Shown one piece after another: positions 4,702-38,096 of a stretch of 38,096 nucleotides of DNA. The stretch lies in contig NC_069007.1 in NCBI RefSeq assembly GCF_001194135.2, forward strand, positions 10,091,415 to 10,129,510. The letters are read 5' to 3'. This DNA comes from Octopus bimaculoides. Lineage: Eukaryota. Each line of letters begins with the position of its first letter. Within the stretch, counting starts at the first letter, position 1. Position numbers and translations under genes: made by a program. The notes beneath the pieces are model-generated. The model searched no databases, had not been told where the DNA came from, and was given only the letters and a program-made list of their open reading frames with translations.

Positions 4702-5078
4702 TTAGAAGAAACTCTTATTTAAGATGAATGCTTGAATAACACAAAATATTAAACAAGGAATTAAAGTAGAGAAAATATGAGATGCATTGTTGAGATAATG
4801 CTTGTCATTGGTTCCTCCACCTTTTTTGCGTCTGAAGATAAAGCTTCCTGCCTTGTGTAAACATGTAACGTTCACTTGAGACCAAACGGTGCCAGGAACA
4901 CAGATTTGAATGAAACTAGCTCCCCATTCCGTACACCGAATAAATCTCGTCGGATCTGAATGAGCAAAGAAATATATTTTGAGTGCGATTGCTTCTCTTG
5001 TACACGGTGATTGGAATAAACAGTAAGATTCCACTTCGTTCCTCAGTGTGTCTTCGGATTTTCTGCATTGGTCTGGCA
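4702..5078 (-). CDS. Last coding exon of secreted lysozyme-like/chitin-binding gene: CBM14 (peritrophin-A)-like domain + hydrophobic C-terminal GPI/TM signal
   Basis: Acceptor TTTTTTTTTCTTTCCATTTCAG|TG at 5079/5078; phase 1 joins the G of exon 2 to give GTG (Val), in frame. Encodes SPCT...YFFAHSDPTRFIRCTEWGASFIQICVPGTVWSQVNVTC (C-x10-C-x12-C as in CBM14) and ends HIFSTLIPCLIFCVIQAFILNKSFF*. Confidence 0.85.
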
Positions 5079-5140
5079 CTGAAATGGAAAGAAAAAAAAA
5101 AGGGAAAGCTAAGATAATTCAATCAATAAGAGTAAGACAT

Positions 5141-5295
5141 TCTTTTCTACTCTAGGTACAAGGCCTGAAATTTTGGGGGAGCGGGGCCAGTCGATTAGAT
5201 CGACCTAGTACGCAACTGGCACTTAATTTATTGACCCCGAAAGGATGAAAGGCAAAGTCGACCCCAGTGGAATTTGAACTCAAGCAATACCGCAG
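5141..5295 (-). mobile_element. SINE family B (central Nin/Deu-like domain), 5'-truncated
   Basis: Reverse complement contains TCGACTTTGCCTTTCATCCTTTCGGGGTCAATAAATTAAGTGCCAG. The same core recurs at 12372, 17716-18770, 19900, 29615 and 30083. Confidence 0.85.
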
Positions 5296-5297
5296 AA

Positions 5298-5858
5298 TAA
5301 ATAAGTTCTTCACTGATAATGGTGTTTACATAACGAAGGGCTTGGTAAAAATTATTAATTATTAATTTATTAATAAATTAATAATCCTTTACCCTTTTAT
5401 TTGTAATAATTATTCACTCCCTGATAGTAAACCGCAGATATTCTACAGTATTGCTTGTGACGCACATGGTAATTCTTGAGGAGGGATAAGAACTGGCTGG
5501 CCTATGTAAGTTCGGAGGTGCTGTTCATATTGTGCTGATGCACGATGTCGCTTGGTCGTGCATGCAGAATTGCCAGCATCGTCAAATTTGCAAACTGGAA
5601 TATCATACTGATGTGGAAATGAAACGTTTTCACTTTTCTAAGCCAGAAACGCGTCTATGATTAACTAAGACTGGTTAGTTTCGTTATTTTTACTTCTTGT
5701 TTTGCCTTTGTGAGTTACAAGTATAGCTATCTGTTGGAGTTTCAGCACTTTAGCTGCTATTTCTGAACTTCGGTATGTGGTGAAGCAACTGTTGCTGATC
5801 CCTTAACTATGTTTATAAATGTATAAGAACTTTTAAATAAGTTCTTCACCGATAATGG

Positions 5859-5868
<10 letters not shown>
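5298..5868 (+). mobile_element. Putative Penelope-like pLTR / retrozyme-like unit bounded by 35-nt direct repeats
   Basis: TAAATAAGTTCTTCAC(T/C)GATAATGGTGTTTACATA at 5298-5332 and 5834-5868 (1 mismatch), enclosing a hammerhead-like motif. Confidence 0.45.
5602..5661 (+). ncRNA. Degenerate type-I hammerhead ribozyme motif
   Basis: Stem I ATCATA(5602-07)/TATGAT(5656-61); core CTGATG(5608-13) lacking A9; stem II TGG...CCA; GAAA(5646-49); palindromic minimal stem III ACGCGT; GTC cleavage triplet (5653-55). Confidence 0.55.
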
Positions 5869-5890
<22 letters not shown>

Positions 5891-5974
5891 TGTCAATTTA
5901 CTACTGGTGGTCTAGCGAGAAAAAAATTAGTCAACAGACTATATATTATTCATATAAAATACAGTGTACATTTA

Positions 5975-6121
5975 ATACACATCAGAGATGCCTATAAAAG
6001 GACATCTGACCTGCTAGAAAGAGCAGCCAAAGCTCTACACCACAATTAGGGATAGGTGTAGAGCTTTGGCTGCTCTTTCTAGCGGGTCAGATGTCCTTTT
6101 ATAGGCATCTCTGATGTGTAT
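5975..6121. repeat. Near-perfect inverted repeat, 67-bp arms, 13-nt loop
   Basis: 5975-6041 is the reverse complement of 6055-6121 with one mismatch. The right arm runs into an N gap. Confidence 0.95.
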
Positions 6122-6355
6122 NNNNNNNNNNNNNNNNNNNNNNNNNNNNNNNNNNNNNNNNNNNNNNNNNNNNNNNNNNNNNNNNNNNNNNNNNNNNNNN
6201 NNNNNNNNNNNNNNNNNNNNNNNNNNNNNNNNNNNNNNNNNNNNNNNNNNNNNNNNNNNNNNNNNNNNNNNNNNNNNNNNNNNNNNNNNNNNNNNNNNNN
6301 NNNNNNNNNNNNNNNNNNNNNNNNNNNNNNNNNNNNNNNNNNNNNNNNNNNNNNN
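6122..6355. other. Assembly gap (N run)
   Basis: N characters. Confidence 1.
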
Positions 6356-6360
6356 ATATA

Positions 6361-6564
6361 TTCATATCTATGTTTGTTTCCCACCATGGCTTGACAACTG
6401 GTGGTGGTGTGTTTGCATTCCCATAACCTAGTGGCTCAGCAAAAGAGATTGATAAAATAAGTAGCAAGCTTAAAAAAAAAATAAGCTCTGAGGTCAATTC
6501 ATTCTTCAAGGTGATGCTCCTGCATGGCCACAGTCTAATGACTGAAACAAGTAAAAGATAAAAG
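6361..6564 (+). mobile_element. SINE family A, 3' half
   Basis: TTTGTTTCCCACCATGGCTTGACAAC...GCATGGCCACAGTCTAATGACTGAAACAAGTAAAAGATAAAAG. Confidence 0.8.
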
Positions 6565-6609
6565 ACAAATGGTTTAACAACAACAAAGATCTTTCAGAAG
6601 TTCTCTTAC

Positions 6610-6889
6610 CTTCTGGAATGTTAGTATTTTGTAGAAAAGTGGTGACATTTCCTTCGGGTACAATAAATTTCTTCCAATATTCTGCTTGGTCAGTCAAATT
6701 CATTGGTATAATATCATTGACAGTCAATAGATACAGGGCCATGGCGTAACCAGAATACAATGGCTTGTCCAGTTCTGAGTAATTGGCTGACGCCATTTCC
6801 ACATTGAATCTTTCTTGACCGATATTGCAGTAAGACATTAGACTTTTACCACATGCTTCTTGAACAGTTTCGAGTTGGTCGGTAGTAAC
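6610..6889 (-). CDS. Second coding exon of lysozyme-like/chitin-binding gene (C-terminal half of lysozyme-like domain)
   Basis: Acceptor AATTATTCTAG|GTT (6890/6889), donor GAAG|GTAAGA (6610/6609). 280 nt = 93 codons + 1 with no stops: VTTDQLETVQ...YSELDKPLYSGYAMALYLLTVNDIIPMNLTDQAEYWKKFIVPEGNVTTF. Phases match both neighbouring exons. Confidence 0.9.
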
Positions 6890-6915
6890 CTAGAATAATT
6901 GGATTATATTTAATT

Positions 6916-7098
6916 GGTGCTAGTGAGGTTGTGTGGTAAGAAGTTTGCTTCGCAGCCACATGGTTCTGAGTTCAGTCCCACTTTGTGAATTCTGGGGCAA
7001 GAGTCTTCTACATATAAGCCTGAACCGACGAAATCCATGTGAGTGGATTTCATAGACAGAAACTGAGAGAAACCTGTCGTGTGTGTGTGTGTCTGTGT
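6916..7098 (+). mobile_element. SINE family A, 5' half
   Basis: GTTGTGTGGTAAGAAGTTTGCTTCGCAGCCACATGGTTCTGAGTTCAGTCCCAC...GAAACCTGTCGTGTGTG. Confidence 0.8.
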
Positions 7099-7109
7099 AT
7101 ACAAATTTT

Positions 7110-7325
7110 GCTTGTTTCAATCATTAGATTGCAGCCATGCTGGGGCTATGCCTTGAAAAATTTTAGTCAAATTAATCAACCCCAGTACATTTGTTCCTAT
7201 TTTTTTTTAAGCATGGTACTTATTCTATCAGTCTTTTGCTGAACTGCTAAGTTACATGGATGTAAACTCACCATAATCGGTTGTCAAGCAATGGTGGGGG
7301 AACAAACACAGACAAAAAGACAAAA
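7110..7325 (-). mobile_element. SINE family A, 3' half
   Basis: CTTGTTTCAATCATTAGATTGCAGCCATGCTGGG...GTTGTCAAGCAATGGTGGGGGAACAAACACAG. Confidence 0.75.
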
Positions 7326-7548
7326 ACACACACACACACAAATACAACATGTGTGTGTGTGTGTGTATTGTCGTTGAATGCTCGAAATGAGGAGTAGATA
7401 GGCAGCCAACAACTGATGAAGGGTCCTTTCTCTGTGTTTACTTGTCCTGTTTTCCTTTTTCTTTTCTCATTGTTTACATATTTCATGTTATTTGCACTGC
7501 TGGTGATGTCCTGTACACATATATTCATTTATATATATATATATATAT

Positions 7549-8067
7549 NNNNNNNNNNNNNNNNNNNNNNNNNNNNNNNNNNNNNNNNNNNNNNNNNNNN
7601 NNNNNNNNNNNNNNNNNNNNNNNNNNNNNNNNNNNNNNNNNNNNNNNNNNNNNNNNNNNNNNNNNNNNNNNNNNNNNNNNNNNNNNNNNNNNNNNNNNNN
7701 NNNNNNNNNNNNNNNNNNNNNNNNNNNNNNNNNNNNNNNNNNNNNNNNNNNNNNNNNNNNNNNNNNNNNNNNNNNNNNNNNNNNNNNNNNNNNNNNNNNN
7801 NNNNNNNNNNNNNNNNNNNNNNNNNNNNNNNNNNNNNNNNNNNNNNNNNNNNNNNNNNNNNNNNNNNNNNNNNNNNNNNNNNNNNNNNNNNNNNNNNNNN
7901 NNNNNNNNNNNNNNNNNNNNNNNNNNNNNNNNNNNNNNNNNNNNNNNNNNNNNNNNNNNNNNNNNNNNNNNNNNNNNNNNNNNNNNNNNNNNNNNNNNNN
8001 NNNNNNNNNNNNNNNNNNNNNNNNNNNNNNNNNNNNNNNNNNNNNNNNNNNNNNNNNNNNNNNNNNN
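7549..8067. other. Assembly gap (N run) flanked by (TA)n
   Basis: N characters. Confidence 1.
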
Positions 8068-8826
8068 TATATATATATATATATATATGTATGTCTGTAT
8101 GAGTTAGAGGTTAAGCAACCATTCAAGGGATAATAAATATCCAATATACTACTGGATGTATACCTACATATTTATATCCAAGTGCTTACTATTGCAGGGC
8201 AGTATCACACTTGAATAGTAGGTATGTGTGGTGGTAAAACAGAAATTTACCCAGTATTTATAAGGCGAATAAGAAAATGAAGAGGATAAACAATCGACAA
8301 ACATCACCCTGTAAGCATTCGTTTATATCTGTTTATTAATTGATTACAATCATATGTATAAGTAATCAAAATAAACAAATGAAATAAGCAAATAAACAAG
8401 TAAATAAATAGATAAATAAAAATAAATAAATGAATAAGAATAAATGAGTGAACAAATGCTAAACTCTTACAGCTATTTCTACTATGGCGTTGCCCAGTCT
8501 GCCAAGTTTTCCACATCATGCCAGTAATATATAGGGATTGTACAAAGGTTGAACAAACATTGAACAGGGGTTGGACAATGATTGAGCTTCAAAGCTTCAT
8601 CAGAGAGACTATAATGTTAGGGATCAACATGTGAGGAAGTAAGGTAAAATAATAAAATAAAATAATAACATAATAGAAATAGTTAGGAATGCCCCAGCAT
8701 GGCCACATTAAAAGATAAAAGAACAGGTATCATTGTATTAACTATTTCAGTTTAAACAACTTTCCTTTGTTTCAATTAATTCTGAATATAACATAGGATT
8801 TATCAAAATAACTTTGTTGTTACTAA

Positions 8827-9473
8827 GCCTTTTGTTACCATATTTCTGTTGAGATGCTCTGTGTTTCTTCCAATTAATTTTAAATATAACAAAGAATTTA
8901 GTAAAATAACTTAGTTATCATAAAGCTAGTGTTAGGAACACAAATTGTGACTAAGGTTTGGTGGAAGATTTTTATTCAGAACTTATGAAAACAAGACATT
9001 TGTACTACAGAGCCAGAGGCTGTTTCAGCTGGGTTGGTATCAAAAAGGTTAAGAATTGTTTCTCTATTATATATTTTAATCCTTTTGTTACCATATTTAT
9101 GTTGAAATGCTCTGTGTTTCTTTCAATTAATTTTAGATATAACAAAGAATATAGTAGAATAACTTAGTTATCATTCAGCTAGTGTTAGGAACAAAAATTG
9201 TGACTAAGGTTTGGTGGAAGATCTTAATTCAGAACTTATGTAAATAAGACACTTGTACTACAGAGCCAGAGGTTTCAGGTGGGTGGATATCGAAAAGGTT
9301 AAGAAATTTTTCTCTATTATATATTTTAACCCTTTTGTTACCATATTTTTGTTGAGATGTTTTATGTTTCTTTCAATTAATTTTAGATATAACAAAGAAT
9401 TTAGTAAAATAACTTAGTTATCATTAAGCTAGTGTTAGGAACAAAAATTGTGACTAAGGTTTGGTGGAAGATT
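8827..9473. mobile_element. Tandem array (about 2.6 x 250 bp) of a piggyBac-like MITE plus its flank
   Basis: CCTTTTGTTACCATATTT at 8828, 9081 and 9331. Complete units end GG(A)TATC(A/G)AAAAGG|TTAA, and units 2 and 3 are preceded by TTAA, consistent with CCCTTT-type TIRs and TTAA targets. Confidence 0.65.
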
Positions 9474-9674
9474 TGGTCAGCCCAAGGCTATAGCAGAAGA
9501 CACTTGCCCAATGTGCCACACACTTTTGTTCAGTCATAATCTATTTCAAAGTTTAAAGGAAGGGAAAAAAAGGGAACAAACGAAGGAAGGAAAGGCAGAA
9601 AAACAGAAGACAAAGAAAGAAAGAAAAGAAGGAAAAAAAGAAACAAAGAAACAGAAAGGATTATAGAACCTTAC

Positions 9675-9929
9675 CCTCCAGATGCCACCTTTATCAGGAG
9701 TGAATGGTATACCATCGTTACTTTGGACAGCCGCAAGTCTGCGGAGGAAAGAATAATCCTCCATCAAAATATTCTGAGATTTTACAAGGATCACAACAGT
9801 TTCGGCTATTTTACTGCCAACATTTCCTTCTATGAGTGTATGGTCAATGGAGAATCCTTCACAGAAAGGAACCAGGACAAGATACAATACATGGAAATAT
9901 CTGATTGTGGTAGAATGCTGCGGTGCCAT
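9675..9929 (-). CDS. First coding exon of lysozyme-like/chitin-binding gene (signal peptide + N-terminal half of lysozyme-like domain)
   Basis: First in-frame ATG at 9929 with an upstream in-frame TGA. The exon is opened by a long polypyrimidine tract + CAG| at 10053/10052; donor AGG|GTAAGG at 9675/9674 (phase 0). 85 aa: MAPQHSTTIRYFHVLYLVLVPFCEG/FSIDH...FLRRLAAVQSNDG...GGIWR. Confidence 0.88.
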
Positions 9930-10117
9930 GTCTTTTAGTACTGATGGCGGCAGAGTACAGATTGAATATGAGCAACAAACTGTTGAAGACTTAAATCAAA
10001 TCTGACACACAGATGGTATTTCTAAATACTAACATCTTATCATCTCAGTCATCTGAAGAAAGAAACAAAGAAATACAATAAACAACACAAGAAAATGCAA
10101 AACAAATATAAAAGAAA

Positions 10118-15671: not shown

Positions 15672-17015
15672 ATGGAAGGCGTTAATCGTTTGGATGCTTC
15701 TGATAACACGGTTTTTAACGATGTAGATTCTGTTACACAGACATACAATGGTGAGAAACCTTTATGCGATGAAACATTTACTGATCAAAGAAATATTACG
15801 GAATATCGCTGTGATTTTTGCAGTAAAACCTTTCTTTCAGAACATGAATTATTCACACACACAGAAATACACAAGGTAAAAGTTTTCCGCTGTGATGTCT
15901 GTGGAAAATCTTTTGTTTCTAACAGTAAGTTAACAAGACACAACTTGGTCCACACGGGAGAAAAATCTTACTGTTGTGAGATATGTGGGAAATGTTTTGC
16001 CTCTAACGGCGATTTAAACAGACACAGAAGAATACACATGGGGGCAAAATCGTTCCAGTGTGACGTATGTGGGAAATCTTTTGTCTCGAATAGCGACTTA
16101 ACAAGTCATAATAGAATACATTCGGGAGGAAAGGCGTTTCACTGCGAAATATGTGGGAAATCTTTCAATTATAATTCGAAACTTGTTATCCACAGACGAA
16201 TACATACTGGAGAAAAACCGTATCACTGTGAAATATGTGGGAAATCGTTTGTCGGCAATAATTATTTGACAAGTCACAGAAGGATACATAACGAAGAAAA
16301 ACTGTTCCACTGTCAGATATGTGAAAGATCGTTCACGAAAAACTCGAACCTTGTTACCCACATTCGTAGCCATACTGGAGAAAAGCCTTTCCGCTGTGAA
16401 ATATGCGAAAAATCTTTTGTTTCTAACACCAAATTAATGACCCACAAAAGGGCGCATACTGGTGAGAAGTCCTTCCACTGTGTAATATGCGGGAAATCTT
16501 TTGTTAATAACAGTAATTTAACAAGGCATAAAATAATCCACACTGGAGAGAAGCCTTTCCACTGTGAAATATGTGGCAAATCTTTCAATTATAATTCGAA
16601 CTTTGTTGTCCACAAAAGAATACATACTGGAGAAAAACCCTATCACTGCAAAGTATGTGGAAAAGCATTTATCGATAATAGTTATTTGATCAGTCACAAA
16701 AGAATACACAACAGAGAAAAACTGTTTCATTGCGATATATGTGAAAAGTCTTTTTCTAATAATTCGAATCTTGTCATCCACAAACGAAGTCACACTGGAG
16801 AAAAACCCTATCACTGTGAGGTATGTGGGAAGTCTTACATGAATAATTCACACCTTGTCACTCACATCCGTAGCCACACTGGAGAAAAACCATACAGCTG
16901 CGAGGTCTGTGAGAAATCCTTTATCACCAACAGTCACTTAACAAGACACAAACAAATCCATACTGAACGGAAGCCTGTTAATTGCGAAACACCAGAAATC
17001 GTCTTGCAAATGTAA
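15672..17015 (+). CDS. C2H2 zinc-finger protein ZF1, 447 aa, 14 tandem fingers, single coding exon
   Basis: Uninterrupted ORF with C-x2-C-x12-H-x3-H repeats every 28 aa from finger 2 onward and TGEKP-type linkers. No recognisable N-terminal effector domain. Confidence 0.95.
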   Translation: MEGVNRLDASDNTVFNDVDSVTQTYNGEKPLCDETFTDQRNITEYRCDFCSKTFLSEHELFTHTEIHKVKVFRCDVCGKSFVSNSKLTRHNLVHTGEKSYCCEICGKCFASNGDLNRHRRIHMGAKSFQCDVCGKSFVSNSDLTSHNRIHSGGKAFHCEICGKSFNYNSKLVIHRRIHTGEKPYHCEICGKSFVGNNYLTSHRRIHNEEKLFHCQICERSFTKNSNLVTHIRSHTGEKPFRCEICEKSFVSNTKLMTHKRAHTGEKSFHCVICGKSFVNNSNLTRHKIIHTGEKPFHCEICGKSFNYNSNFVVHKRIHTGEKPYHCKVCGKAFIDNSYLISHKRIHNREKLFHCDICEKSFSNNSNLVIHKRSHTGEKPYHCEVCGKSYMNNSHLVTHIRSHTGEKPYSCEVCEKSFITNSHLTRHKQIHTERKPVNCETPEIVLQM

Positions 17016-19899: not shown

Positions 19900-20092
19900 C
19901 TATTATGGACACAGGACCTGAAATTTGGAGGAGGAGGAGGATAGTCAATTGCATCAACCCCAGTGGTACTTAATTTATTGATCCTGAAAGGATGAAAGAC
20001 AAAGTCGACTTCTGTGGAATTTGAACTCAGAACGGAGCGACGGCTAAGCATTTTGTCCAGCGTGCTAACGATTCTGCCAGCTTGCCACCTTA
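19900..20092 (-). mobile_element. SINE family B with (AAT)n tail
   Basis: GTGGTACTTAATTTATTGATCCTGAAAGGATGAAAGACAAAGTCGAC...GCTAACGATTCTGCCAGCTTGCCACCT, preceded by (TAA)n. Confidence 0.85.
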
Positions 20093-25744: not shown

Positions 25745-27124
25745 ATGTCAAAATTGGTAGGAAAATCTTCATATAATTGCAATGTCTGTAAAAAATCATT
25801 CTCCCAAAAACATGGTCTTACTGAACACAAGCGAATTCATACAGGAGAAAAACCATTTTATTGTGGTATCTGTGGTAAATCATTTTCAAAAAACGATCAC
25901 CTTACTAAACATATACGCATCCATACAGGGGACAAACCATATCACTGTGATATCTGTGGTAGATCATTTTCTTGTACAAGTAGCTTAACTAGTCACAAAC
26001 GTACTCATACAGGAGACAAACCATATCACTGTGATATCTGTGGAAAATCATTCTCTGAAGGAAGTGCTGTCACTATACATAAACGCATTCATACAGGAGA
26101 GAAACCATATCGCTGTGACGTCTGTGGTAAATCCTTTTCTCAAGGAAACCATTTAACTACACACAAGTATATTCATACTGGGAAGAAACCATATCACTGT
26201 GATATCTGTGGTAAATCATTTTCTCATAAAGTTGTTCTACAAACACATAAGTTTATTCATACAGGAGAAAAACCATATCAGTGCAGTATCTGTGGCAAAT
26301 CCTTCTCTCTTATGAATCACTTGACTAATCACAAACAGATTCATACTGAGGGGAACCCTTGTGCCTGTGACATCTGTGGTAAATCATTCTCTCAAATAAA
26401 TCACTTAACTAAACACAAATACATTCACACAGGAGACAAACCATATCACTGTGATATCTGTAATAGATCATTTTCTTTAAATCGTTACTTAACTAGGCAC
26501 AAGTTTACTCATACTGGAGAAAAGCCATACATCTGTAATATCTGTGGTAAGTCATTCTCTCATACAAGCAGCTTAACTAAACACAAAATTATTCATACAG
26601 GAGAAAAGCCATATCCTTGTGATATTTGTGGTGTGTCATTCTCTCATATGACTAGCTTAACTAACCACAAACGGATTCATACAGGAGAGAAGCCATTTCA
26701 CTGTGATATCTGTGGTAAATCATTTGCTCAAGGAGGTAGCTTAGCTCAACACAAATGCATTCATACAGGAGAAAAACCATATTACTGTGATATCTGTGGC
26801 AAGTCGTTCTTTCGACAACATTACTTAACTGTACACAAGTATATTCATACAGGAGAGAAACCATACCACTGTGATATCTGTGGTAAATCATTCTCTTATA
26901 AAGGTAACTTAACTCAACACAATCGTATTCATACAGGAGAGAAACCATATCGCTGTGATATCTGTGGTAAATCGTTCTCTCATACAAGTACCTTAACTCA
27001 ACATCAACACATTCATACAGGAGAGAAACAACATTGCTGTGATATTTGTGGCAAGTCATTCTCTGTTGTGGGTAGCTTAACTAAACATAAGCGAATTCAC
27101 AGAAGAAAAACCATTCCATTGTGA
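25745..27124 (+). CDS. C2H2 zinc-finger protein ZF2, 459 aa, 16 tandem fingers
   Basis: Uninterrupted ORF of 28-aa C2H2 units with TGEKP linkers. It ends via a frameshift in the last linker (RRKTIPL*). AATAAA at 27513. Confidence 0.93.
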
Positions 27125-30082: not shown

Positions 30083-30417
30083 CTTCTTTATTGCCCACAA
30101 GGGGCTAAACAAGGACAGATAGAGGGATTAAGTCGATTACATCGACCCCAGTGCATAACTGGTACTTAATTTATCGACCCTGAAAGGATGAAAGGCAAAG
30201 TCGACCTCGAAGGAATTTGAACTCAGTACGTAAAGACAGACGAAATACCGCTAAGCATTTCACCCGGCGTGCTAACGTTTCTTATTTCTTTATTGCCCAC
30301 AAGGGGCTAAACATAGAGGGGACAAACAAGGACAAAGGGATTAAGCCGATTACATCAACCCCAGTGCGCAACTGGTACTTAATTTATCGACCCTGAAAGG
30401 ATGAAAGGCAAAGTCGA
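30083..30417 (-). mobile_element. Two head-to-tail young SINE family B copies (second truncated by gap)
   Basis: TTCTTTATTGCCCACAAGGGGCTAAAC...ACTGGTACTTAATTTATCGACCCTGAAAGGATGAAAGGCAAAGTCGA occurs twice (30083, 30287), nearly identical. Confidence 0.9.
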
Positions 30418-30689
30418 NNNNNNNNNNNNNNNNNNNNNNNNNNNNNNNNNNNNNNNNNNNNNNNNNNNNNNNNNNNNNNNNNNNNNNNNNNNNNNNNNNN
30501 NNNNNNNNNNNNNNNNNNNNNNNNNNNNNNNNNNNNNNNNNNNNNNNNNNNNNNNNNNNNNNNNNNNNNNNNNNNNNNNNNNNNNNNNNNNNNNNNNNNN
30601 NNNNNNNNNNNNNNNNNNNNNNNNNNNNNNNNNNNNNNNNNNNNNNNNNNNNNNNNNNNNNNNNNNNNNNNNNNNNNNNNNNNNNNNNN
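30418..30689. other. Assembly gap (N run)
   Basis: N characters. Confidence 1.
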
Positions 30690-31950: not shown

Positions 31951-32610
31951 TTAAGAAACAATAGACAATGATTTACTGCAGGTGTTGCAGTGATATGGCT
32001 TCTCTCCTGTATGGGTGAGTTTGTGTCTTTTTAAGCTACTTGTCTGAGAGAATGATTTACCACAGATATCACATTTAAAAGGTCTGATTCCTGAATGGCT
32101 ACGCTTATGTTTAGTTAAGGTACTTCCTTCAGAGAACGATTTACCACAGACATCACAGTGATATGGCTTCTCTCCTGTATGAATGTTCTTATGTGCTGTT
32201 AAGTGACTCTTTTGAAAAAATGATTTAGTGCAGACATCACAGTGAAATAGCTTCTCTCCCGTATGAAAGTACTTGTGTTCGGTTAAGTGACATTTTTGAT
32301 AGAATGTTTTGCCACAAATATCACAAAGATATGGTTTTTCTCCGGTATGTGTACGTTTGTGAGTTGTCAAGTGACTTCCTTCAGAGAATGATCTGCCACA
32401 GACATCACAGTGATATGGTTTCTCACCTGTATGTACGCGTATGTGTGTAACTAAGTAGTTATTTTGAGAGAAAGTTTTACCGCAAATATCACAGCGATGT
32501 GGCTTTGCTACTTTGGGAGTTCGTTTGGGAGCTGAGACGTAATCTCTTTGAGAGGATGGCTTTTCACAGATATCACTACTGTCTGTTGATTTCCCTGTCT
32601 CTTCTGCCAT
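31951..32610 (-). CDS. C2H2 zinc-finger protein ZF3, 219 aa, 6 intact fingers plus degenerate N-terminal and truncated C-terminal fingers
   Basis: ORF with C2H2 repeats and TGEKP linkers. The N-terminal DSSDICEKPSSQRDYVSAPKRTP is a finger that lost its Zn ligands. The last finger stops at CNTCSKSLSIVS*. Confidence 0.88.
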   Translation of the reverse strand: MAEETGKSTDSSDICEKPSSQRDYVSAPKRTPKVAKPHRCDICGKTFSQNNYLVTHIRVHTGEKPYHCDVCGRSFSEGSHLTTHKRTHTGEKPYLCDICGKTFYQKCHLTEHKYFHTGEKLFHCDVCTKSFFQKSHLTAHKNIHTGEKPYHCDVCGKSFSEGSTLTKHKRSHSGIRPFKCDICGKSFSQTSSLKRHKLTHTGEKPYHCNTCSKSLSIVS

Positions 32611-36248: not shown

Positions 36249-38096
36249 TTATTTAAATGTTAATTCAATCCTTCTCTCTTTCTTGTTGAAATTGTTGATA
36301 ACATCATTGTAGAAGGTATCGTTCTTAATGCTTTTTAAAACGGCTTTTTCTATGCCAATTAGAGCTAAACTGCTCGACCTTTCTTGTCCCTGCGAATTTC
36401 TCGTATAACTATGAATTCTGTTTAGGTATGAAGAAGAGCGCTCCACTGTAGCACTTATTGTTGGTAGTGTTAATATTAATTCACAAAGCTTCGTTAACTG
36501 GGGCAAAGCTTCATCTAATCCACTATTACGCAGGATGTAAAGTAAATCTTGAATGGATTTTCCTTTTAGTTCAGCATCTTTGTACAGGGCAGTAAGTTCG
36601 CTTCTTAACTTTTGGCTGTCGAAATGGTCTTCATAGGTATGTTTAAGACAAGTTAGAGATGTTTCCTGGACGTTGTTACTTTGTCTCATTGGATCGAGAA
36701 GCGCTAAAAAATGTAATTCATTTAAATTTTGAAATCTTATCTCAATGTGCTCGCAAATTAAATCTATAATTTTGTAGAACAGCTGTCTGTATCTTTCTTC
36801 TTCTGTTTCAAAAGCAGTTTTTCTTTTCTTTATTTGAGGATAAATGCCATCAACGTTAGCCCAAAATTTAGAAAATTCTTGCTTTTTTTCTTTCAAAACT
36901 TTCACAATTTCATTTACTGTATGAATACAGTAGAATACGTCAAATGTATTTTCCTGGAGGATGTCAAATGCTGTATTTGTGTAAATAAAAATATCTCCAA
37001 ACACATTTAACAAAAAATTGAATTCACAATTTTGTAAATTAGAATACAACGACTGAGCATAGGTATAGCTTTCCGTGTCCCATCTACTTGAATTATCAAT
37101 GATGTTTAGGAATAAATCAGCAAGTTGCTCATGATATTCACGAACTGTTTCTACCAAAGAATGATTCAAGTTCCAGCGAGTTGGCGTCACTTTTGGAAAA
37201 CGCTTTTTAATTTCAGTATCTAGATGCACGCGTTTGGTCGACTTACAAAAAAATAACGAAAAAGACTTTATCTGTGAAAAAAACTTATCGCATTCTTGAA
37301 TATTTGCAGCCGCTTGAGACAGAACTAGATTTAATCTATGGGCCATACAATGAACAAAAAAAGCATGAGGATACTTTTCTTTAACTTTCTTTTGCAAACC
37401 ATTTAATTCACTTGGCATCACACTTGCACCATCATAAGTATGAGCCACAAACTTATGGCCAATTTTTAACTCTTCTATTTTATCGAACACAATTTTTGAC
37501 AAACCACTTGCCGTACGATCAAAACTTACATTTAAAAATCCTAAAAATCTTTCTGCAATATTACCGTCACTTAAAACATATCTTATAACAAATGAAAGCT
37601 GTGCTCCAGTTCTAATTTCAGTTGCTTCATCTAAAATGATAGCCACAAATGTTGAATCGTTAATTTCCGATTTAATCTTTTCTAAAAGAACTTCAGCCAC
37701 GCTATTTATTAAATCATTTTGAAATCTGTTTGAAGTGCCAGAAAAAACGCCTTCCTCTTGCAAATTTGATAATATAGGATCGTATTTCTTACAGAGGTGG
37801 AGTATTTCTACGTAATTGCCCTCATTATCAAAATCAGCTGATTCATCATGACCTCTGAATGCTAGTTGTTGTTCACTTAAAAAACAAACTACATCAATTA
37901 ATCGTCTTAAGATCTCCCTATTTTTCTTTACTTTTTCATTATGAGTTTCAATATTCTTTTGATGTTGGCTGTTTAATAAAAAATCAATACGCGTTTTTCC
38001 GAATCTTGTTAAATCAATCACTGATGTTAAATGAGAAGTAGATAGCTCGTGTCTTTTAATGGCTTTATGCAAATTATTTAAATCAGAAAATCCATA
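36249..38096 (-). CDS. hAT-superfamily transposase / ZMYM1-like protein (DUF4371-type + hAT dimerisation domain), at least 615 aa, 5' end outside window
   Basis: The frame is open to the window edge: the ORF-track start at 38072 is TTG, preceded in frame by YGFSDLNN. Motifs HE.S..H (TTF-type Zn finger end), LAFRGHDE, IILDEAT (D), YDGASVM (D), CMAHRLNL (CxxH), PTRW and TVERSSS (E). Confidence 0.9.
   Translation of the reverse strand, partial: YGFSDLNNLHKAIKRHELSTSHLTSVIDLTRFGKTRIDFLLNSQHQKNIETHNEKVKKNREILRRLIDVVCFLSEQQLAFRGHDESADFDNEGNYVEILHLCKKYDPILSNLQEEGVFSGTSNRFQNDLINSVAEVLLEKIKSEINDSTFVAIILDEATEIRTGAQLSFVIRYVLSDGNIAERFLGFLNVSFDRTASGLSKIVFDKIEELKIGHKFVAHTYDGASVMPSELNGLQKKVKEKYPHAFFVHCMAHRLNLVLSQAAANIQECDKFFSQIKSFSLFFCKSTKRVHLDTEIKKRFPKVTPTRWNLNHSLVETVREYHEQLADLFLNIIDNSSRWDTESYTYAQSLYSNLQNCEFNFLLNVFGDIFIYTNTAFDILQENTFDVFYCIHTVNEIVKVLKEKKQEFSKFWANVDGIYPQIKKRKTAFETEEERYRQLFYKIIDLICEHIEIRFQNLNELHFLALLDPMRQSNNVQETSLTCLKHTYEDHFDSQKLRSELTALYKDAELKGKSIQDLLYILRNSGLDEALPQLTKLCELILTLPTISATVERSSSYLNRIHSYTRNSQGQERSSSLALIGIEKAVLKSIKNDTFYNDVINNFNKKERRIELTFK

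What the first reader, a model, noticed from the sequence alone, without database searches (positions are those of the whole stretch)
4702..10052. Hidden 3-exon gene: secreted lysozyme-fold + chitin-binding + membrane-anchor protein
Three ORF fragments join with canonical GT-AG sites and matching phases (0, then 1) into a 303-aa protein. Its parts are a signal peptide (cleavage about CEG/F), a domain with the pattern FLRRLAAVQS.DG..GGIWRV...LDKPLYSG.A.ALYL...IP...QAEYWK, a CBM14-like domain (C-x10-C-x12-C, FIRC, CxPGTVW) and a hydrophobic C-terminus. Five N-glycosylation sequons (NYS, NLT, NVT, NVT, NAS) fit an extracellular protein. From memory, the middle pattern matches a poorly characterised invertebrate family (RRxAxVESxDG...GGIWQV...KPLYS...QAxYWK) related to phage/bacterial lysozyme/lytic-transglycosylase-fold proteins. 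A cell-surface protein with two putative GlcNAc-polymer-binding modules could be an undescribed chitin/peptidoglycan sensor, or a matrix protein of chitinous cephalopod structures such as sucker cuticle, beak or radula. The function is inference.
Basis: partly seen in the sequence, partly recalled or inferred. Interest (0 to 1): 0.88.

Follow-up and report, generated by a model that had tools for sequence, protein, structure and literature searches.

The report
Octopus surface protein: dead lysozyme-like plus chitin-binding
This is a real, conserved three-exon octopus gene for a membrane-tethered surface glycoprotein that joins a chitin-binding module to a domain from a large, unnamed animal family related to probable phage cell-wall-lysing enzymes; the octopus copy has lost the likely catalytic residues, so it probably binds sugar polymers rather than cutting them.

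Summary
Exons 9929-9675, 6889-6610 and 5078-4702 (minus strand) join through GT-AG sites in phases 0 and 1 into a 303-aa protein. Both assembly gaps lie inside introns. Gap-free orthologous loci in Octopus sinensis (303 aa, 94% identical) and Argonauta hians have the same exon structure. dN/dS against O. sinensis is 0.15.

The C-terminal module is a CBM14 chitin-binding domain. It falls just below Pfam's cut-off, but it is homologous to Pfam-positive repeats and its fold matches Der p 23 and the CHIT1 CBM14.

The N-terminal 150-aa all-helical domain (pLDDT about 96) belongs to a large animal family with no Pfam, NCBIfam or PDB match: 957 cluster representatives, from sponges to echinoderms. 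The family is homologous to phage family phrog_3108, labelled "unknown function". In phages that gene sits in lysis cassettes beside holins and spanins, or at the C-terminus of very large proteins.

The link to SLT/GH23 lysozyme-like enzymes is weak but coherent. It rests on a motif-level hhalign match and on GH23 structures topping a non-significant Foldseek list.

The window protein replaces the residues that are invariant between phages and animals (E69Q, Q85R, D87T, N162V). I read it as a non-catalytic, probably GPI-anchored binder of GlcNAc polymers. Its function is inferred, not shown.

The parts
9675..9929 (-). Exon 1 (255 nt, codons 1-85; ATG at 9929-9927). It encodes the signal-peptide-like N-terminus (aa 1-25, 9855-9929) and the first part of the N-domain up to GGIWR.
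   Evidence: tblastn of orthologs and paralogs all end at 9672-9675. The exon size is identical in O. sinensis and Argonauta.
9723..9725 (-). Codon CAA = Gln69. It sits at the position of the Glu conserved in all ten phage and animal sequences of alignment A6 and in 60% of animal family domains (the putative catalytic Glu).
   Evidence: hhalign puts this column on the catalytic Glu of SLT domains.
6890..9674 (-). Intron 1 (phase 0). It contains the assembly gap 7549-8067 and a 250-bp tandem repeat at 8824-9472.
   Evidence: The intron ends align with the gap-free O. sinensis intron.
6610..6889 (-). Exon 2 (280 nt, codons 86-178 plus the first base of codon 179). It encodes the rest of the N-domain (LDKPLYSG, IP, QAEYWK).
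5079..6609 (-). Intron 2 (phase 1). It contains the assembly gap 6122-6355 and a SINE-like element at about 5150-5320.
4702..5078 (-). Exon 3 (377 nt, codons 179-303 plus TAA at 4702-4704).
4852..5067 (-). Cys-rich region (aa 183-254). It holds a CBM14 (peritrophin-A) chitin-binding domain (Pfam match aa 215-254). The domain is a four-Cys variant, C203...C226-x10-C237-x12-C250, preceded by an extra Cys pair, C183/C197.
   Evidence: Pfam CBM_14 scores 19.5-21.3 bits against a cut-off of 22.1. tblastn E=1e-16 to the Pfam-positive repeats of P0003, P0020 and P0026. Foldseek: Der p 23 at prob 1.00, TM 0.69, rmsd 1.1; also the CHIT1 CBM14, Avr4 and tachycitin.
4723..4782 (-). C-terminal hydrophobic segment (aa 278-297, IFSTLIPCLIFCVIQAFIL). 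A low-confidence linker, RRKKGGGTNDKHYLNNAS, precedes it and only NKSFF follows. Probable GPI-attachment signal; alternatively a single-pass anchor.
   Evidence: helix 278-300; pLDDT below 50 for 256-279. The Argonauta ortholog ends in a hydrophobic tail of only 14 aa with no cytosolic tail. No GPI predictor was available.

Best explanation
The locus is a functional octopod gene. Its product enters the secretory pathway (shown: an N-terminal signal-like h-region; inferred: cleavage before FSIDH). It is N-glycosylated (inferred from the sequons). It is held on the outer face of the cell membrane by a C-terminal GPI anchor or, less likely, a single helix (inferred). The ectodomain has two modules.

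Module 1 (aa 26-179) belongs to a large unnamed metazoan family that shares ancestry with phage family phrog_3108. Gene neighbourhood marks those phage proteins as probable endolysins or virion-associated cell-wall lysins. The family shows a distant SLT/GH23 (goose-lysozyme / lytic-transglycosylase) signature: E-S/T, then G-I-W-Q-V-D.

In the window protein, and in all nine cephalopod domain copies examined, the conserved Glu is gone. The window protein has E69Q, and it has also changed Q85R, D87T, Y161I and N162V. The structural core is kept and evolves under strong purifying selection. The module is therefore most likely a pseudo-enzyme that keeps a glycan-binding groove.

Module 2 (aa about 203-254) is a CBM14 chitin-binding domain.

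I propose that together they make a non-catalytic, membrane-tethered binder of GlcNAc polymers. It would hold or organise nascent chitin at the apical surface of chitin-secreting epithelia such as sucker lining, beak, radula or gut cuticle. That role is analogous to the CBM14 Obstructor proteins and the GPI-anchored Knickkopf of insects, and to chitinase-like lectins.

Shown: the gene model, conservation, family membership, phage homology, the CBM14 fold and the residue substitutions. Inferred: muralytic ancestry, loss of activity, GPI anchoring, chitin as the ligand, and the tissue.
For: Gene model and constraint:
- The spliced ORF is intact.
- Exon structure is identical in gap-free O. sinensis and Argonauta loci.
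- A 142-aa UniParc entry is identical across junction 1.
- dN/dS is 0.15 overall, 0.10 for the N-domain and 0.05 for the CBM.

Family:
- A profile search gave 957 representatives at E<=1e-3 and 419 at E<=1e-10.
- Named members come from Octopus, Argonauta, Owenia, Amphiura, Amphimedon, Hypsibius and mites.
- No Pfam or NCBIfam model matches.

Structure:
- The AF2 model of the N-domain has pLDDT 95.8 and is all-helical.

Phage link:
- tblastn of animal P0057 hit a megaphage ORF at E=2e-10, and also phiKO2 Gp54.
- P0057 matches phrog_3108 at E=3.7e-13.
- The BFVD hit A0A6J5QT34 scores E=7e-7 over 171 columns.
- The joint alignment has invariant E, G..Q.D, IP and A.YWK..N..G.

Lysis context:
- In phiKO2, Gp54 lies between a three-TM holin-like Gp53 and Gp55. 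The spanin census (PMC6139136, supplementary file 5) lists Gp55 as the i-spanin.
- No other endolysin is annotated in phiKO2 or in K21lambda1.
- PMBT28 and K21lambda1 have the gene next to an annotated holin.
- Of 77 immediate neighbours in IMG/VR contigs, 13 match the Gp55 family and 9 the Gp53 family. Several match annotated holin families, and 3 match Q-like antiterminators.
- The domain also forms the C-terminus of proteins of 700-1126 aa.

SLT/GH23 link:
- hhalign against five E. coli SLT domains scores 24.5 (P=0.003). It aligns VES..GGIWQV with QES..GLMQI. In 200 column shuffles the maximum was 19.4.
- The top PDB fold hits are the GH23 chitinase Ra-ChiC and P. aeruginosa Slt.

Loss of catalytic residues.

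CBM14.

Matrix-type partners of the domain in relatives are VWA and multiple CBM14 domains.
Against: - The lysozyme-like assignment does not reach significance by any single method. Foldseek gives E of 1.6-8 and TM of 0.39-0.47. hhalign probability is only 10%. There are no SLT Pfam hits in 60 members and no PDB sequence hits.
- No phrog_3108 member has a demonstrated activity. The endolysin role rests on gene order.
- The ortholog P0001 does not itself hit phrog_3108 at E<=0.01. The link is transitive, through the animal family.
- 40% of animal domains lack the Glu. The Glu may therefore not be essential to the family's function.
- Sponge relatives are fused to Death or CARD domains, which points to signalling rather than matrix roles.
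- Expression, tissue, ligand and anchor type were not tested.
Confidence: 0.5

Rival explanations
1. Cell-surface pattern-recognition receptor. The dead lysozyme-like domain and the CBM14 bind microbial peptidoglycan or fungal chitin at epithelia or haemocytes. The protein would then signal through a co-receptor, as non-catalytic PGRPs do.
For: - Sponge family members carry CARD or Death domains in front of the same domain, also with the Glu replaced, by Met. A ligand-sensing use of the module therefore exists elsewhere.
- Phage relatives probably act on peptidoglycan.
- The protein is tethered to the membrane.
Against: - A GPI-type tail has no signalling part.
- The cephalopod and annelid partners of the domain are matrix-type modules, VWA and multiple CBM14, not immune domains.
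- There is no expression or induction evidence.
Confidence: 0.25
2. The N-domain is an unrelated helical module that only mimics the SLT motif. It binds something other than glycans, for example a protein partner, and the CBM14 alone provides chitin binding.
For: - Nothing significant was found in the PDB by fold or by sequence.
- No Pfam SLT signal was found.
- The conserved Glu is dispensable in 40% of domains.
Against: - The motif alignment exceeds all 200 shuffles, and in the right register.
- The only coherent group among the top fold hits is GH23.
- Phage homologs occupy the endolysin slot beside several unrelated holin families.
- E69, D87 and N162 co-vary as a set.
Confidence: 0.15
3. 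The protein is still an active glycosidase (lysozyme, lytic transglycosylase or chitinase) that uses other residues.
For: The fold core and many family-invariant positions are retained under purifying selection.
Against: - E69Q is the classic inactivating change in GH23 and SLT enzymes. The deposited E162Q and E141Q mutants of Ra-ChiC appear among the hits.
- Three further polar positions invariant between phages and animals are also replaced.
Confidence: 0.05
4. Annotation artefact or decaying pseudogene. The three ORFs only appear to join.
For: - The gene is absent as a full model from the protein collection for this genome.
- Both introns contain gaps.
Against: - The reading frame is intact.
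- Exon sizes and phases are identical in two other octopods.
- dN/dS is 0.15.
- The intron position after GGIWR is shared by paralogs.
Confidence: 0.03

Closest known systems
phrog_3108 (phage proteins such as Klebsiella phage phiKO2 Gp54 and Vibrio phage NVP2096O_37; labelled 'unknown function')
   Same: The domain is homologous, of about 150 aa. Shared motifs are E-[ST]-x-x-G, G-[ILV]-[WT]-Q-[VF]-D, IP, A-x-Y-W-K-x-x-[YW]-N and G-K-G-T. An animal family member matches the PHROG profile at E=3.7e-13.
   Different: The phage proteins are cytoplasmic stand-alone proteins in lysis cassettes, or C-terminal domains of large proteins. They keep the Glu. The window protein is secreted, glycosylated, fused to a CBM14, membrane-tethered and interrupted by introns, and it has Q at that position. 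The ortholog P0001 does not reach the PHROG profile on its own.
SLT domain / GH23 enzymes (lytic transglycosylases Slt70, MltC, MltD, EmtA; goose-type lysozyme; the GH23 chitinase Ra-ChiC of Ralstonia sp. A-471)
   Same: - The fold is all-helical and of similar size.
- The helix-end E-S motif is followed by G-[LI]-[MW]-Q-[IV]; MltD even reads GIWQI.
- The later motifs keep the same order in the relaxed alignment.
- GH23 structures are the top PDB fold hits.
- Ra-ChiC pairs a GH23 domain with chitin-binding modules, by my recollection of the literature on that enzyme.
   Different: - There is no Pfam PF01464 hit.
- Foldseek and hhalign results are below significance.
- The catalytic Glu is absent from the octopus protein.
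Chitinase-like lectins (GH18 pseudo-enzymes such as YKL-40 and insect IDGFs) and non-catalytic PGRPs
   Same: The logic is the same: a glycan-cleaving fold whose catalytic residue is replaced while the binding groove is kept, re-used as a binding or signalling protein. This rests on established knowledge of those families.
   Different: The folds are unrelated (GH18 TIM barrel; amidase_2). Binding by the octopus domain has not been shown.
CBM14 matrix proteins (peritrophins, insect Obstructor, molluscan Pif/BMSP with VWA+CBM14) and GPI-anchored Knickkopf
   Same: The CBM14 module is shared. Relatives of the window protein carry VWA plus CBM14, as Pif/BMSP do (Owenia P0026). Membrane tethering at a chitin-forming surface would parallel Knickkopf.
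   Different: - There is a single CBM14, with four rather than six canonical cysteines.
- The N-terminal lysozyme-like domain is not part of any of those proteins, as far as I know.
- The window protein has no VWA domain.
Octopus sinensis LOC118768355 and Argonauta hians LOC115213595 (uncharacterized proteins)
   Same: These are orthologs: 94% and 69% identity, the same three exons and the same domain order.
   Different: They are only automatic predictions, with no function assigned. The Argonauta tail is longer and richer in Gly, Ala and Ser.

Membership tests
Unnamed metazoan 'LLRRIAYVE[ST]xDG...GGIWQV...KPLYSGLAARL...QAxYWK' domain family | Significant full-length match to the family profile | tested here: met
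   The profile search recovers ortholog P0001 at E=4e-72 over profile positions 1-154, and 957 representatives in all. The window domain aligns end to end with 248 other domains.
Unnamed metazoan 'LLRRIAYVE[ST]xDG...GGIWQV...KPLYSGLAARL...QAxYWK' domain family | Nearly invariant core residues (A66, G73, G82, I83, W84, P128, S131, Q153, W157) | tested here: met
   All are present in the window protein. Each is conserved in at least 235 of the 249 domains.
phrog_3108 | Match to the PHROG profile HMM | tested here: not met
   P0001 (94% identical to the window protein) gives no hit at E<=0.01. Animal relative P0057 hits at E=3.7e-13, and phage Gp54 at 3.7e-53. The relationship is transitive.
phrog_3108 | Residues invariant between phages and animals: E, G-x-x-Q-x-D, IP, A-x-Y-W-K-x-x-[YW]-N | tested here: not met
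   The window protein has Q69, R85, T87, I161 and V162. It retains IP146-147, A154, Y156, W157 and K158.
SLT domain (Pfam PF01464) / GH23 | Pfam SLT profile match | tested here: not met
   No SLT hit for the window protein at E<=10, nor for any of 60 family members at E<=1. E. coli controls score 81-124 bits.
SLT domain (Pfam PF01464) / GH23 | Catalytic Glu at the end of the helix in the E-S motif | tested here: not met
   The window protein has Gln69 (CAA, 9725-9723). The family has Glu in 149 of 249 domains. The equivalence to the SLT Glu rests on the hhalign register.
SLT domain (Pfam PF01464) / GH23 | Profile-profile similarity to SLT domains | tested here: inconclusive
   hhalign gives score 24.5, P=0.003 and probability 10% over 33 columns. 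None of 200 column shuffles reached it (maximum 19.4). A deeper enterobacterial profile gives P=0.01.
SLT domain (Pfam PF01464) / GH23 | Lysozyme-like fold | tested here: inconclusive
   Foldseek with the pLDDT-95.8 model puts Ra-ChiC (GH23; 3w6b-f) on top at E of 1.6-4 and TM of 0.39-0.44, and Slt (5ohu) at TMq 0.47 and E=8. Nothing is significant.
CBM14 (peritrophin-A, Pfam PF01607) | Pfam gathering score (22.1 bits) | tested here: not met
   19.5 bits for the full protein and 21.3 bits for exon 3 alone. The orthologs score 18.1 and 19.7 bits, always over aa 215-254.
CBM14 (peritrophin-A, Pfam PF01607) | Homology to repeats that pass the Pfam threshold | tested here: met
   Exon 3 matches the CBM_14 repeats of P0003 (E=1e-16), P0020 and P0026 by tblastn. 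Those proteins score 54, 126 and 53 bits.
CBM14 (peritrophin-A, Pfam PF01607) | CBM14 fold (beta-hairpin plus small sheet, disulfide-stabilised) | tested here: met
   Foldseek: Der p 23 4zce at prob 1.00, TMt 0.69 and rmsd 1.1 A. It also hits the CHIT1 CBM14 6so0, Avr4, Blo t 12 and tachycitin, plus many baculovirus ChtBD2 proteins.
CBM14 (peritrophin-A, Pfam PF01607) | Six conserved cysteines | tested here: not met
   Four canonical positions are present (C203, C226, C237, C250). The paralog repeats show the same four-Cys pattern. An extra pair, C183/C197, lies upstream. The pairing could not be checked.
GPI-anchored proteins | Cleavable C-terminal signal: small omega-site residues, a short spacer, and a hydrophobic tail reaching the C-terminus | not testable with these tools
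   The sequence reads GGGTNDKHYLNNAS, then a 20-aa hydrophobic stretch, then NKSFF. The Argonauta tail is too short for a membrane span. No GPI predictor or experiment was available.

The most novel reading that the evidence does not exclude
The N-domain defines an unrecognised animal lysozyme-like family. It would be distinct from c-, g-, i- and phage-T4-type lysozymes, and it shares ancestry with an unannotated family of phage endolysins or virion lysins (phrog_3108). Glu-bearing small secreted members would be active antibacterial or chitinolytic enzymes. At least two lineages would have turned the fold into non-catalytic ligand-binding modules. One is the Met subfamily, fused to CARD or Death domains in sponges as cytosolic sensors. 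The other is the cephalopod Gln/Arg subfamily, fused to CBM14 or VWA as surface and matrix proteins. The window gene would be the membrane-tethered representative of the second.
Probability: 0.4. Interest if true: 0.8.

Novelty: new variant of a known kind. Interest (0 to 1): 0.6.

Why it matters
If the reading is right, three things follow.

1. A family with roughly a thousand sequence clusters, spread from sponges to echinoderms, has no name, no profile and no solved structure. It would gain a testable biochemical identity as a lysozyme-like cell-wall or chitin enzyme and its pseudo-enzyme derivatives.

2. Phages such as phiKO2, PMBT28 and K21lambda1 have no annotated endolysin. They would gain one. 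That matters for phage annotation and for lysin discovery.

3. Octopods would have a membrane-tethered protein with two modules for binding GlcNAc polymers. It is a candidate organiser of chitinous structures such as sucker lining, beak, radula and stylets, or a microbial sensor. The CARD and Death fusions in sponges would be a new sensor architecture in early-branching animals.

For this single gene the immediate value is modest. It is one uncharacterised member whose ortholog is already predicted in a sister species.

Tried and rejected
- **Sequence libraries.** Pfam, NCBIfam and PDB sequence searches of the N-domain found nothing. This covered the window protein, 60 family members, the family profile and the phage relatives. 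One mite protein, P0008, hit Pfam Alp7A_like_C. None of the 60 other members did, so I set it aside.
- **Foldseek with the full-length model.** It returned only CBM14 matches. A domain-only model was needed, and that gave only sub-threshold GH23 hits.
- **Deeper SLT profile.** Adding 120 database hits did not help, because they were nearly all enterobacterial EmtA, MltC or Slt. P went from 0.003 to 0.01.
- **Transcript evidence.** The 142-aa UniParc fragment is not on record in the contig index.
- **Literature.** Searches for the LOC identifiers, for octopus chitin-binding proteomes, for shell-matrix lysozyme-like proteins and for horizontally transferred transglycosylases found no description of this family. 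The original phiKO2 paper is not held.
- **Second copy in the window.** tblastn shows only one.
- **Hidden exon in a gap.** I rejected this because two gap-free orthologs have the same three exons.

Full report
**1. The observation**

On the minus strand, three segments join into a 912-nt open frame encoding 303 aa:
- 9929-9675 (255 nt);
- 6889-6610 (280 nt);
- 5078-4702 (377 nt, including TAA).

The splice sites are canonical (GG|gtaagg, ttctag|G, AG|gtaaga, and a polypyrimidine tract ending ttcag|T). The phases are 0 and 1. So are the five sequons, and a sixth (NKS) lies in the last six residues.

The two assembly gaps, 7549-8067 and 6122-6355, lie inside introns 1 and 2. Continuity of frame across them is therefore irrelevant to the CDS. 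The remaining risk was a hidden exon or a mis-join.

**2. Independent support for the gene model**

A protein search returned three kinds of relative:
- O. sinensis LOC118768355 (P0001): 303 aa, 94% identity, full coverage.
- Argonauta hians (P0002): 318 aa, 69% identity.
- Paralogs with three CBM14 repeats (P0003 from O. bimaculoides, and P0004).

I fetched the gap-free genomic loci of P0001 and P0002 and reconstructed their exons by brute force. The sizes are 255/280/377 nt and 255/280/422 nt, with the same GT-AG junctions. The intron ends of the window align with those of O. sinensis.

UniParc entry UPI0006956780 (P0222, 142 aa) is identical to residues 25-166 of the window protein and crosses the exon 1/2 junction. 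Paralogs share the intron position after GGIWR.

Against O. sinensis, dS is 0.19 and dN is 0.029, so omega is 0.15. By region, omega is 0.10 for the N-domain and 0.05 for the CBM, against 0.35-0.47 for the signal peptide and the tail.

The gene is real and under purifying selection. It is only partly hidden: a full model for this genome is absent from the protein collection, but a fragment and a sister-species ortholog exist.

**3. The C-terminal half**

Pfam gives only CBM_14, just under its cut-off of 22.1 bits. The full protein scores 19.5 bits and exon 3 alone scores 21.3. The two orthologs score 18-20 bits over the same residues, 215-254.

Exon 3 matches, at E down to 1e-16, the repeats of P0003, P0020 and P0026. 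Those proteins pass the Pfam threshold.

The AlphaFold model built on P0001 with 66 sequences folds this region into five short strands at pLDDT of about 80. Foldseek against the PDB then returns:
- Der p 23 (prob 1.00, TM 0.69, rmsd 1.1 A);
- the CHIT1 CBM14;
- Avr4;
- Blo t 12;
- tachycitin.

The viral library returns many baculovirus and entomopoxvirus chitin-binding proteins.

The domain is a four-cysteine CBM14 variant with an extra upstream Cys pair. After it comes a low-confidence basic, Gly-rich linker (aa 256-279), then a hydrophobic helix (aa 278-300) followed by only five residues. In Argonauta the hydrophobic tail is about 14 residues long and ends the protein. This pattern fits a GPI signal better than a type I anchor. 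I could not run a predictor.

**4. The N-terminal domain is a member of a large, unnamed animal family**

A profile of five N-domains was searched against 1.84 billion representatives. It found 957 proteins at E<=1e-3 and 419 at E<=1e-10.

Most hits are secreted proteins of 170-250 aa that carry the domain right after a signal peptide. Others fuse it to further modules:
- VWA domains (O. vulgaris P0012, Amphiura P0163, mites);
- VWA plus three CBM14 (Owenia P0026);
- many CBM14 repeats (Argonauta P0020);
- in sponge-type sequences, an N-terminal CARD or Death domain with no signal peptide (Amphimedon LOC109582004 and LOC109582008, P0171, P0210).

No Pfam or NCBIfam model covers the domain. No PDB sequence matches it. 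The domain-only AlphaFold model is an eight-helix bundle with pLDDT 95.8 and pTM 0.91.

**5. Phage relatives and what they do**

The only significant fold hit in the viral library is a 1021-aa protein of an uncultured tailed phage (E=7e-7, 171 columns, 22% identity).

tblastn of animal member P0057 against GenBank phages found three relatives:
- a 203-aa ORF of a 636-kb uncultured phage (33% identity, E=2e-10);
- Klebsiella phage phiKO2 Gp54;
- a Vibrio phage protein.

These all belong to phrog_3108, labelled "unknown function". P0057 itself matches that profile at E=3.7e-13. A joint alignment of phage and animal sequences has invariant E, G-x-x-Q-x-D, I, A-x-x-W, N and G positions; the P after that I, and the Y and K flanking the W, are nearly invariant.

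The gene context in phages points to cell-wall lysis:
- In phiKO2, Gp54 lies between Gp53 (101 aa, three hydrophobic segments, charged tail: holin-like) and Gp55.
- The curated spanin census of Kongari et al. lists Gp55 (47583-48048) as the i-spanin, with the o-spanin at 48044-48293 (PMC6139136, supplementary file 5).
- No other endolysin is annotated anywhere in phiKO2.
- In Salmonella phage PMBT28 and Klebsiella phage K21lambda1 the homolog is followed by an annotated holin. K21lambda1 has no annotated endolysin elsewhere.

A scan of IMG/VR found 143 viral contigs with a relative. They show two contexts:
- In most, it is a 150-215-aa ORF flanked by small membrane proteins.
- In at least seven, it is the C-terminal domain of a 390-1126-aa protein.

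I scanned 77 immediate neighbours against PHROGs. The tally was:
- 13 in the Gp55 family;
- 9 in the Gp53 family;
- several in four annotated holin families;
- 3 Q-like antiterminators.

Lysis cassettes and large virion proteins are the two classic homes of phage peptidoglycan hydrolases. I therefore infer that phrog_3108 is an unrecognised muralytic family. No activity has been shown.

**6. Is it lysozyme-like?**

The consensus VE[ST]xDG...GGIWQVD recalls SLT motifs I and II. I tested this rather than trusting memory.

I took the SLT domains of E. coli Slt70, EmtA, MltC, MltD and MltF from the K-12 genome and confirmed them with Pfam. hhalign of the 249-domain family alignment against them gives a 33-column local match with score 24.5 and P=0.003. 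It places the family Glu on the catalytic Glu, and GGIWQV on GLMQI. In 200 column-shuffled controls the mean was 11.5, the sd 2.1 and the maximum 19.4. The reversed alignment scored 11.7.

With a relaxed threshold the later SLT motifs fall in the same order, but without confidence: DPxxNIxxGxxYL against KPLYSGLAARLYL, and AYNxG against YWKxxYNxxG.

The domain-only model searched against the PDB gives nothing significant. Its top hits are nevertheless the GH23 chitinase Ra-ChiC (3w6b-f; E of 1.6-4, TM of 0.39-0.44). P. aeruginosa Slt (5ohu) follows further down at TMq 0.47 and E=8.

Taken together with the phage context, I put about 0.65 on the domain being a divergent member of the lysozyme-like (SLT/GH23-type) superfamily. 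Strict membership is not established.

**7. The octopus protein has lost the putative active site**

At the Glu column, the 249 domains have E in 149, M in 66, Q in 17, A in 6 and R in 4. By contrast, A66, G73, G82, I83, W84, P128, S131, Q153 and W157 are conserved in 94-99%.

The polar positions co-vary:
- Glu-bearing domains tend to have D87 (76 of 149) and N162 (63 of 149).
- The Met subfamily, which includes the CARD and Death fusions, has S or T at 87 and M at 162.
- The window protein has Q69, R85, T87, I161 and V162.
- None of the nine cephalopod domain copies examined has the Glu.

In GH23 and SLT enzymes, E-to-Q is the standard inactivating change; mutants of exactly this kind are among the structures hit. 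The fold is nevertheless strongly conserved in octopods (omega 0.10). This is the signature of a pseudo-enzyme kept for binding.

**8. Mechanism proposed**

The protein would be a secreted, glycosylated, probably GPI-anchored surface protein. Its ectodomain combines a non-catalytic lysozyme-like groove with a CBM14. It would bind GlcNAc polymers without cutting them.

Its closest relatives combine the same domain with matrix modules (VWA and CBM14 arrays, as in Pif/BMSP-type proteins). For that reason I favour tethering or organising chitin at chitin-secreting epithelia (0.5). The alternative is a microbial peptidoglycan or chitin sensor (0.25); the sponge CARD and Death fusions keep that alive. 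Residual activity, an unrelated function of the N-domain, and an artefact are less likely.

**9. Novelty**

The gene is a new variant within known kinds: a lysozyme-like pseudo-enzyme plus a CBM14 protein. The broader point is the more interesting one. It is an unnamed animal family of about a thousand clusters, tied to an unannotated phage lysin family. It needs biochemical confirmation.

I found no paper describing the family. That search covers open-access literature only.

Noticed in passing
L003:2866-3357 (Klebsiella phage phiKO2 gene 54); L012:2501-2998 (Salmonella phage PMBT28); L014:611-1108 (Klebsiella phage K21lambda1): These phages have no annotated endolysin. The phrog_3108 gene sits beside the holin and spanin genes, so it is probably their missing endolysin. 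PHROGs, Pfam and NCBIfam all leave it unnamed.
   Followed up: partly
P0165, P0243 (Amphimedon queenslandica LOC109582004 and LOC109582008), P0171, P0210: Sponge-type relatives carry an N-terminal CARD or Death domain, no signal peptide, and Met in place of the conserved Glu. This is a possible cytosolic sensor architecture that I have not seen described.
   Followed up: partly
L004:3848-4459 (636-kb uncultured phage LR756504.1): A huge-phage ORF of 203 aa is closer to the animal family than the other phage members are. It shows 33% identity to P0057 and shares the GIDW..VEW motif. It lies between a ribonucleotide reductase gene and a topoisomerase II gene. A second, weaker copy lies at about 254.8 kb of the same record. 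It may bear on the direction of transfer.
   Followed up: no
window 8824-9472: A 250-bp unit repeated 2.6 times in tandem (91% matches) inside intron 1 of the gene.
   Followed up: partly
window 5221-5259, 19968-20006, 30164-30202, 30377-30415 (all minus strand): Four copies of a SINE-like element (core GACTTTGCCTTTCATCCTTTCGGGGTCAATAAATTAAGT, 0-3 mismatches). One lies in intron 2 of the gene and one abuts the gap at 30418.
   Followed up: partly
window 15672-17015 (+), 25745-27124 (+), 31951-32610 (-): Three long intronless ORFs encode arrays of C2H2 zinc fingers, with 13, 14 and 5 fingers by the Pfam zf-C2H2 match. I recall C2H2 zinc-finger gene expansion being reported for octopus genomes; this was not checked here.
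   Followed up: partly
window 36249-38072 (-): An intact 607-aa ORF carries DUF4371 and a hAT-family C-terminal dimerisation domain. It is a hAT-type transposase or a domesticated derivative, and it runs close to the window end.
   Followed up: partly
P0008 residues 123-193 (mite Medioppia subpectinata): The C-terminal part of one family domain scores 39.9 bits on Pfam Alp7A_like_C (PF22128; cut-off 22). None of the other 60 members scanned does. Unexplained.
   Followed up: no
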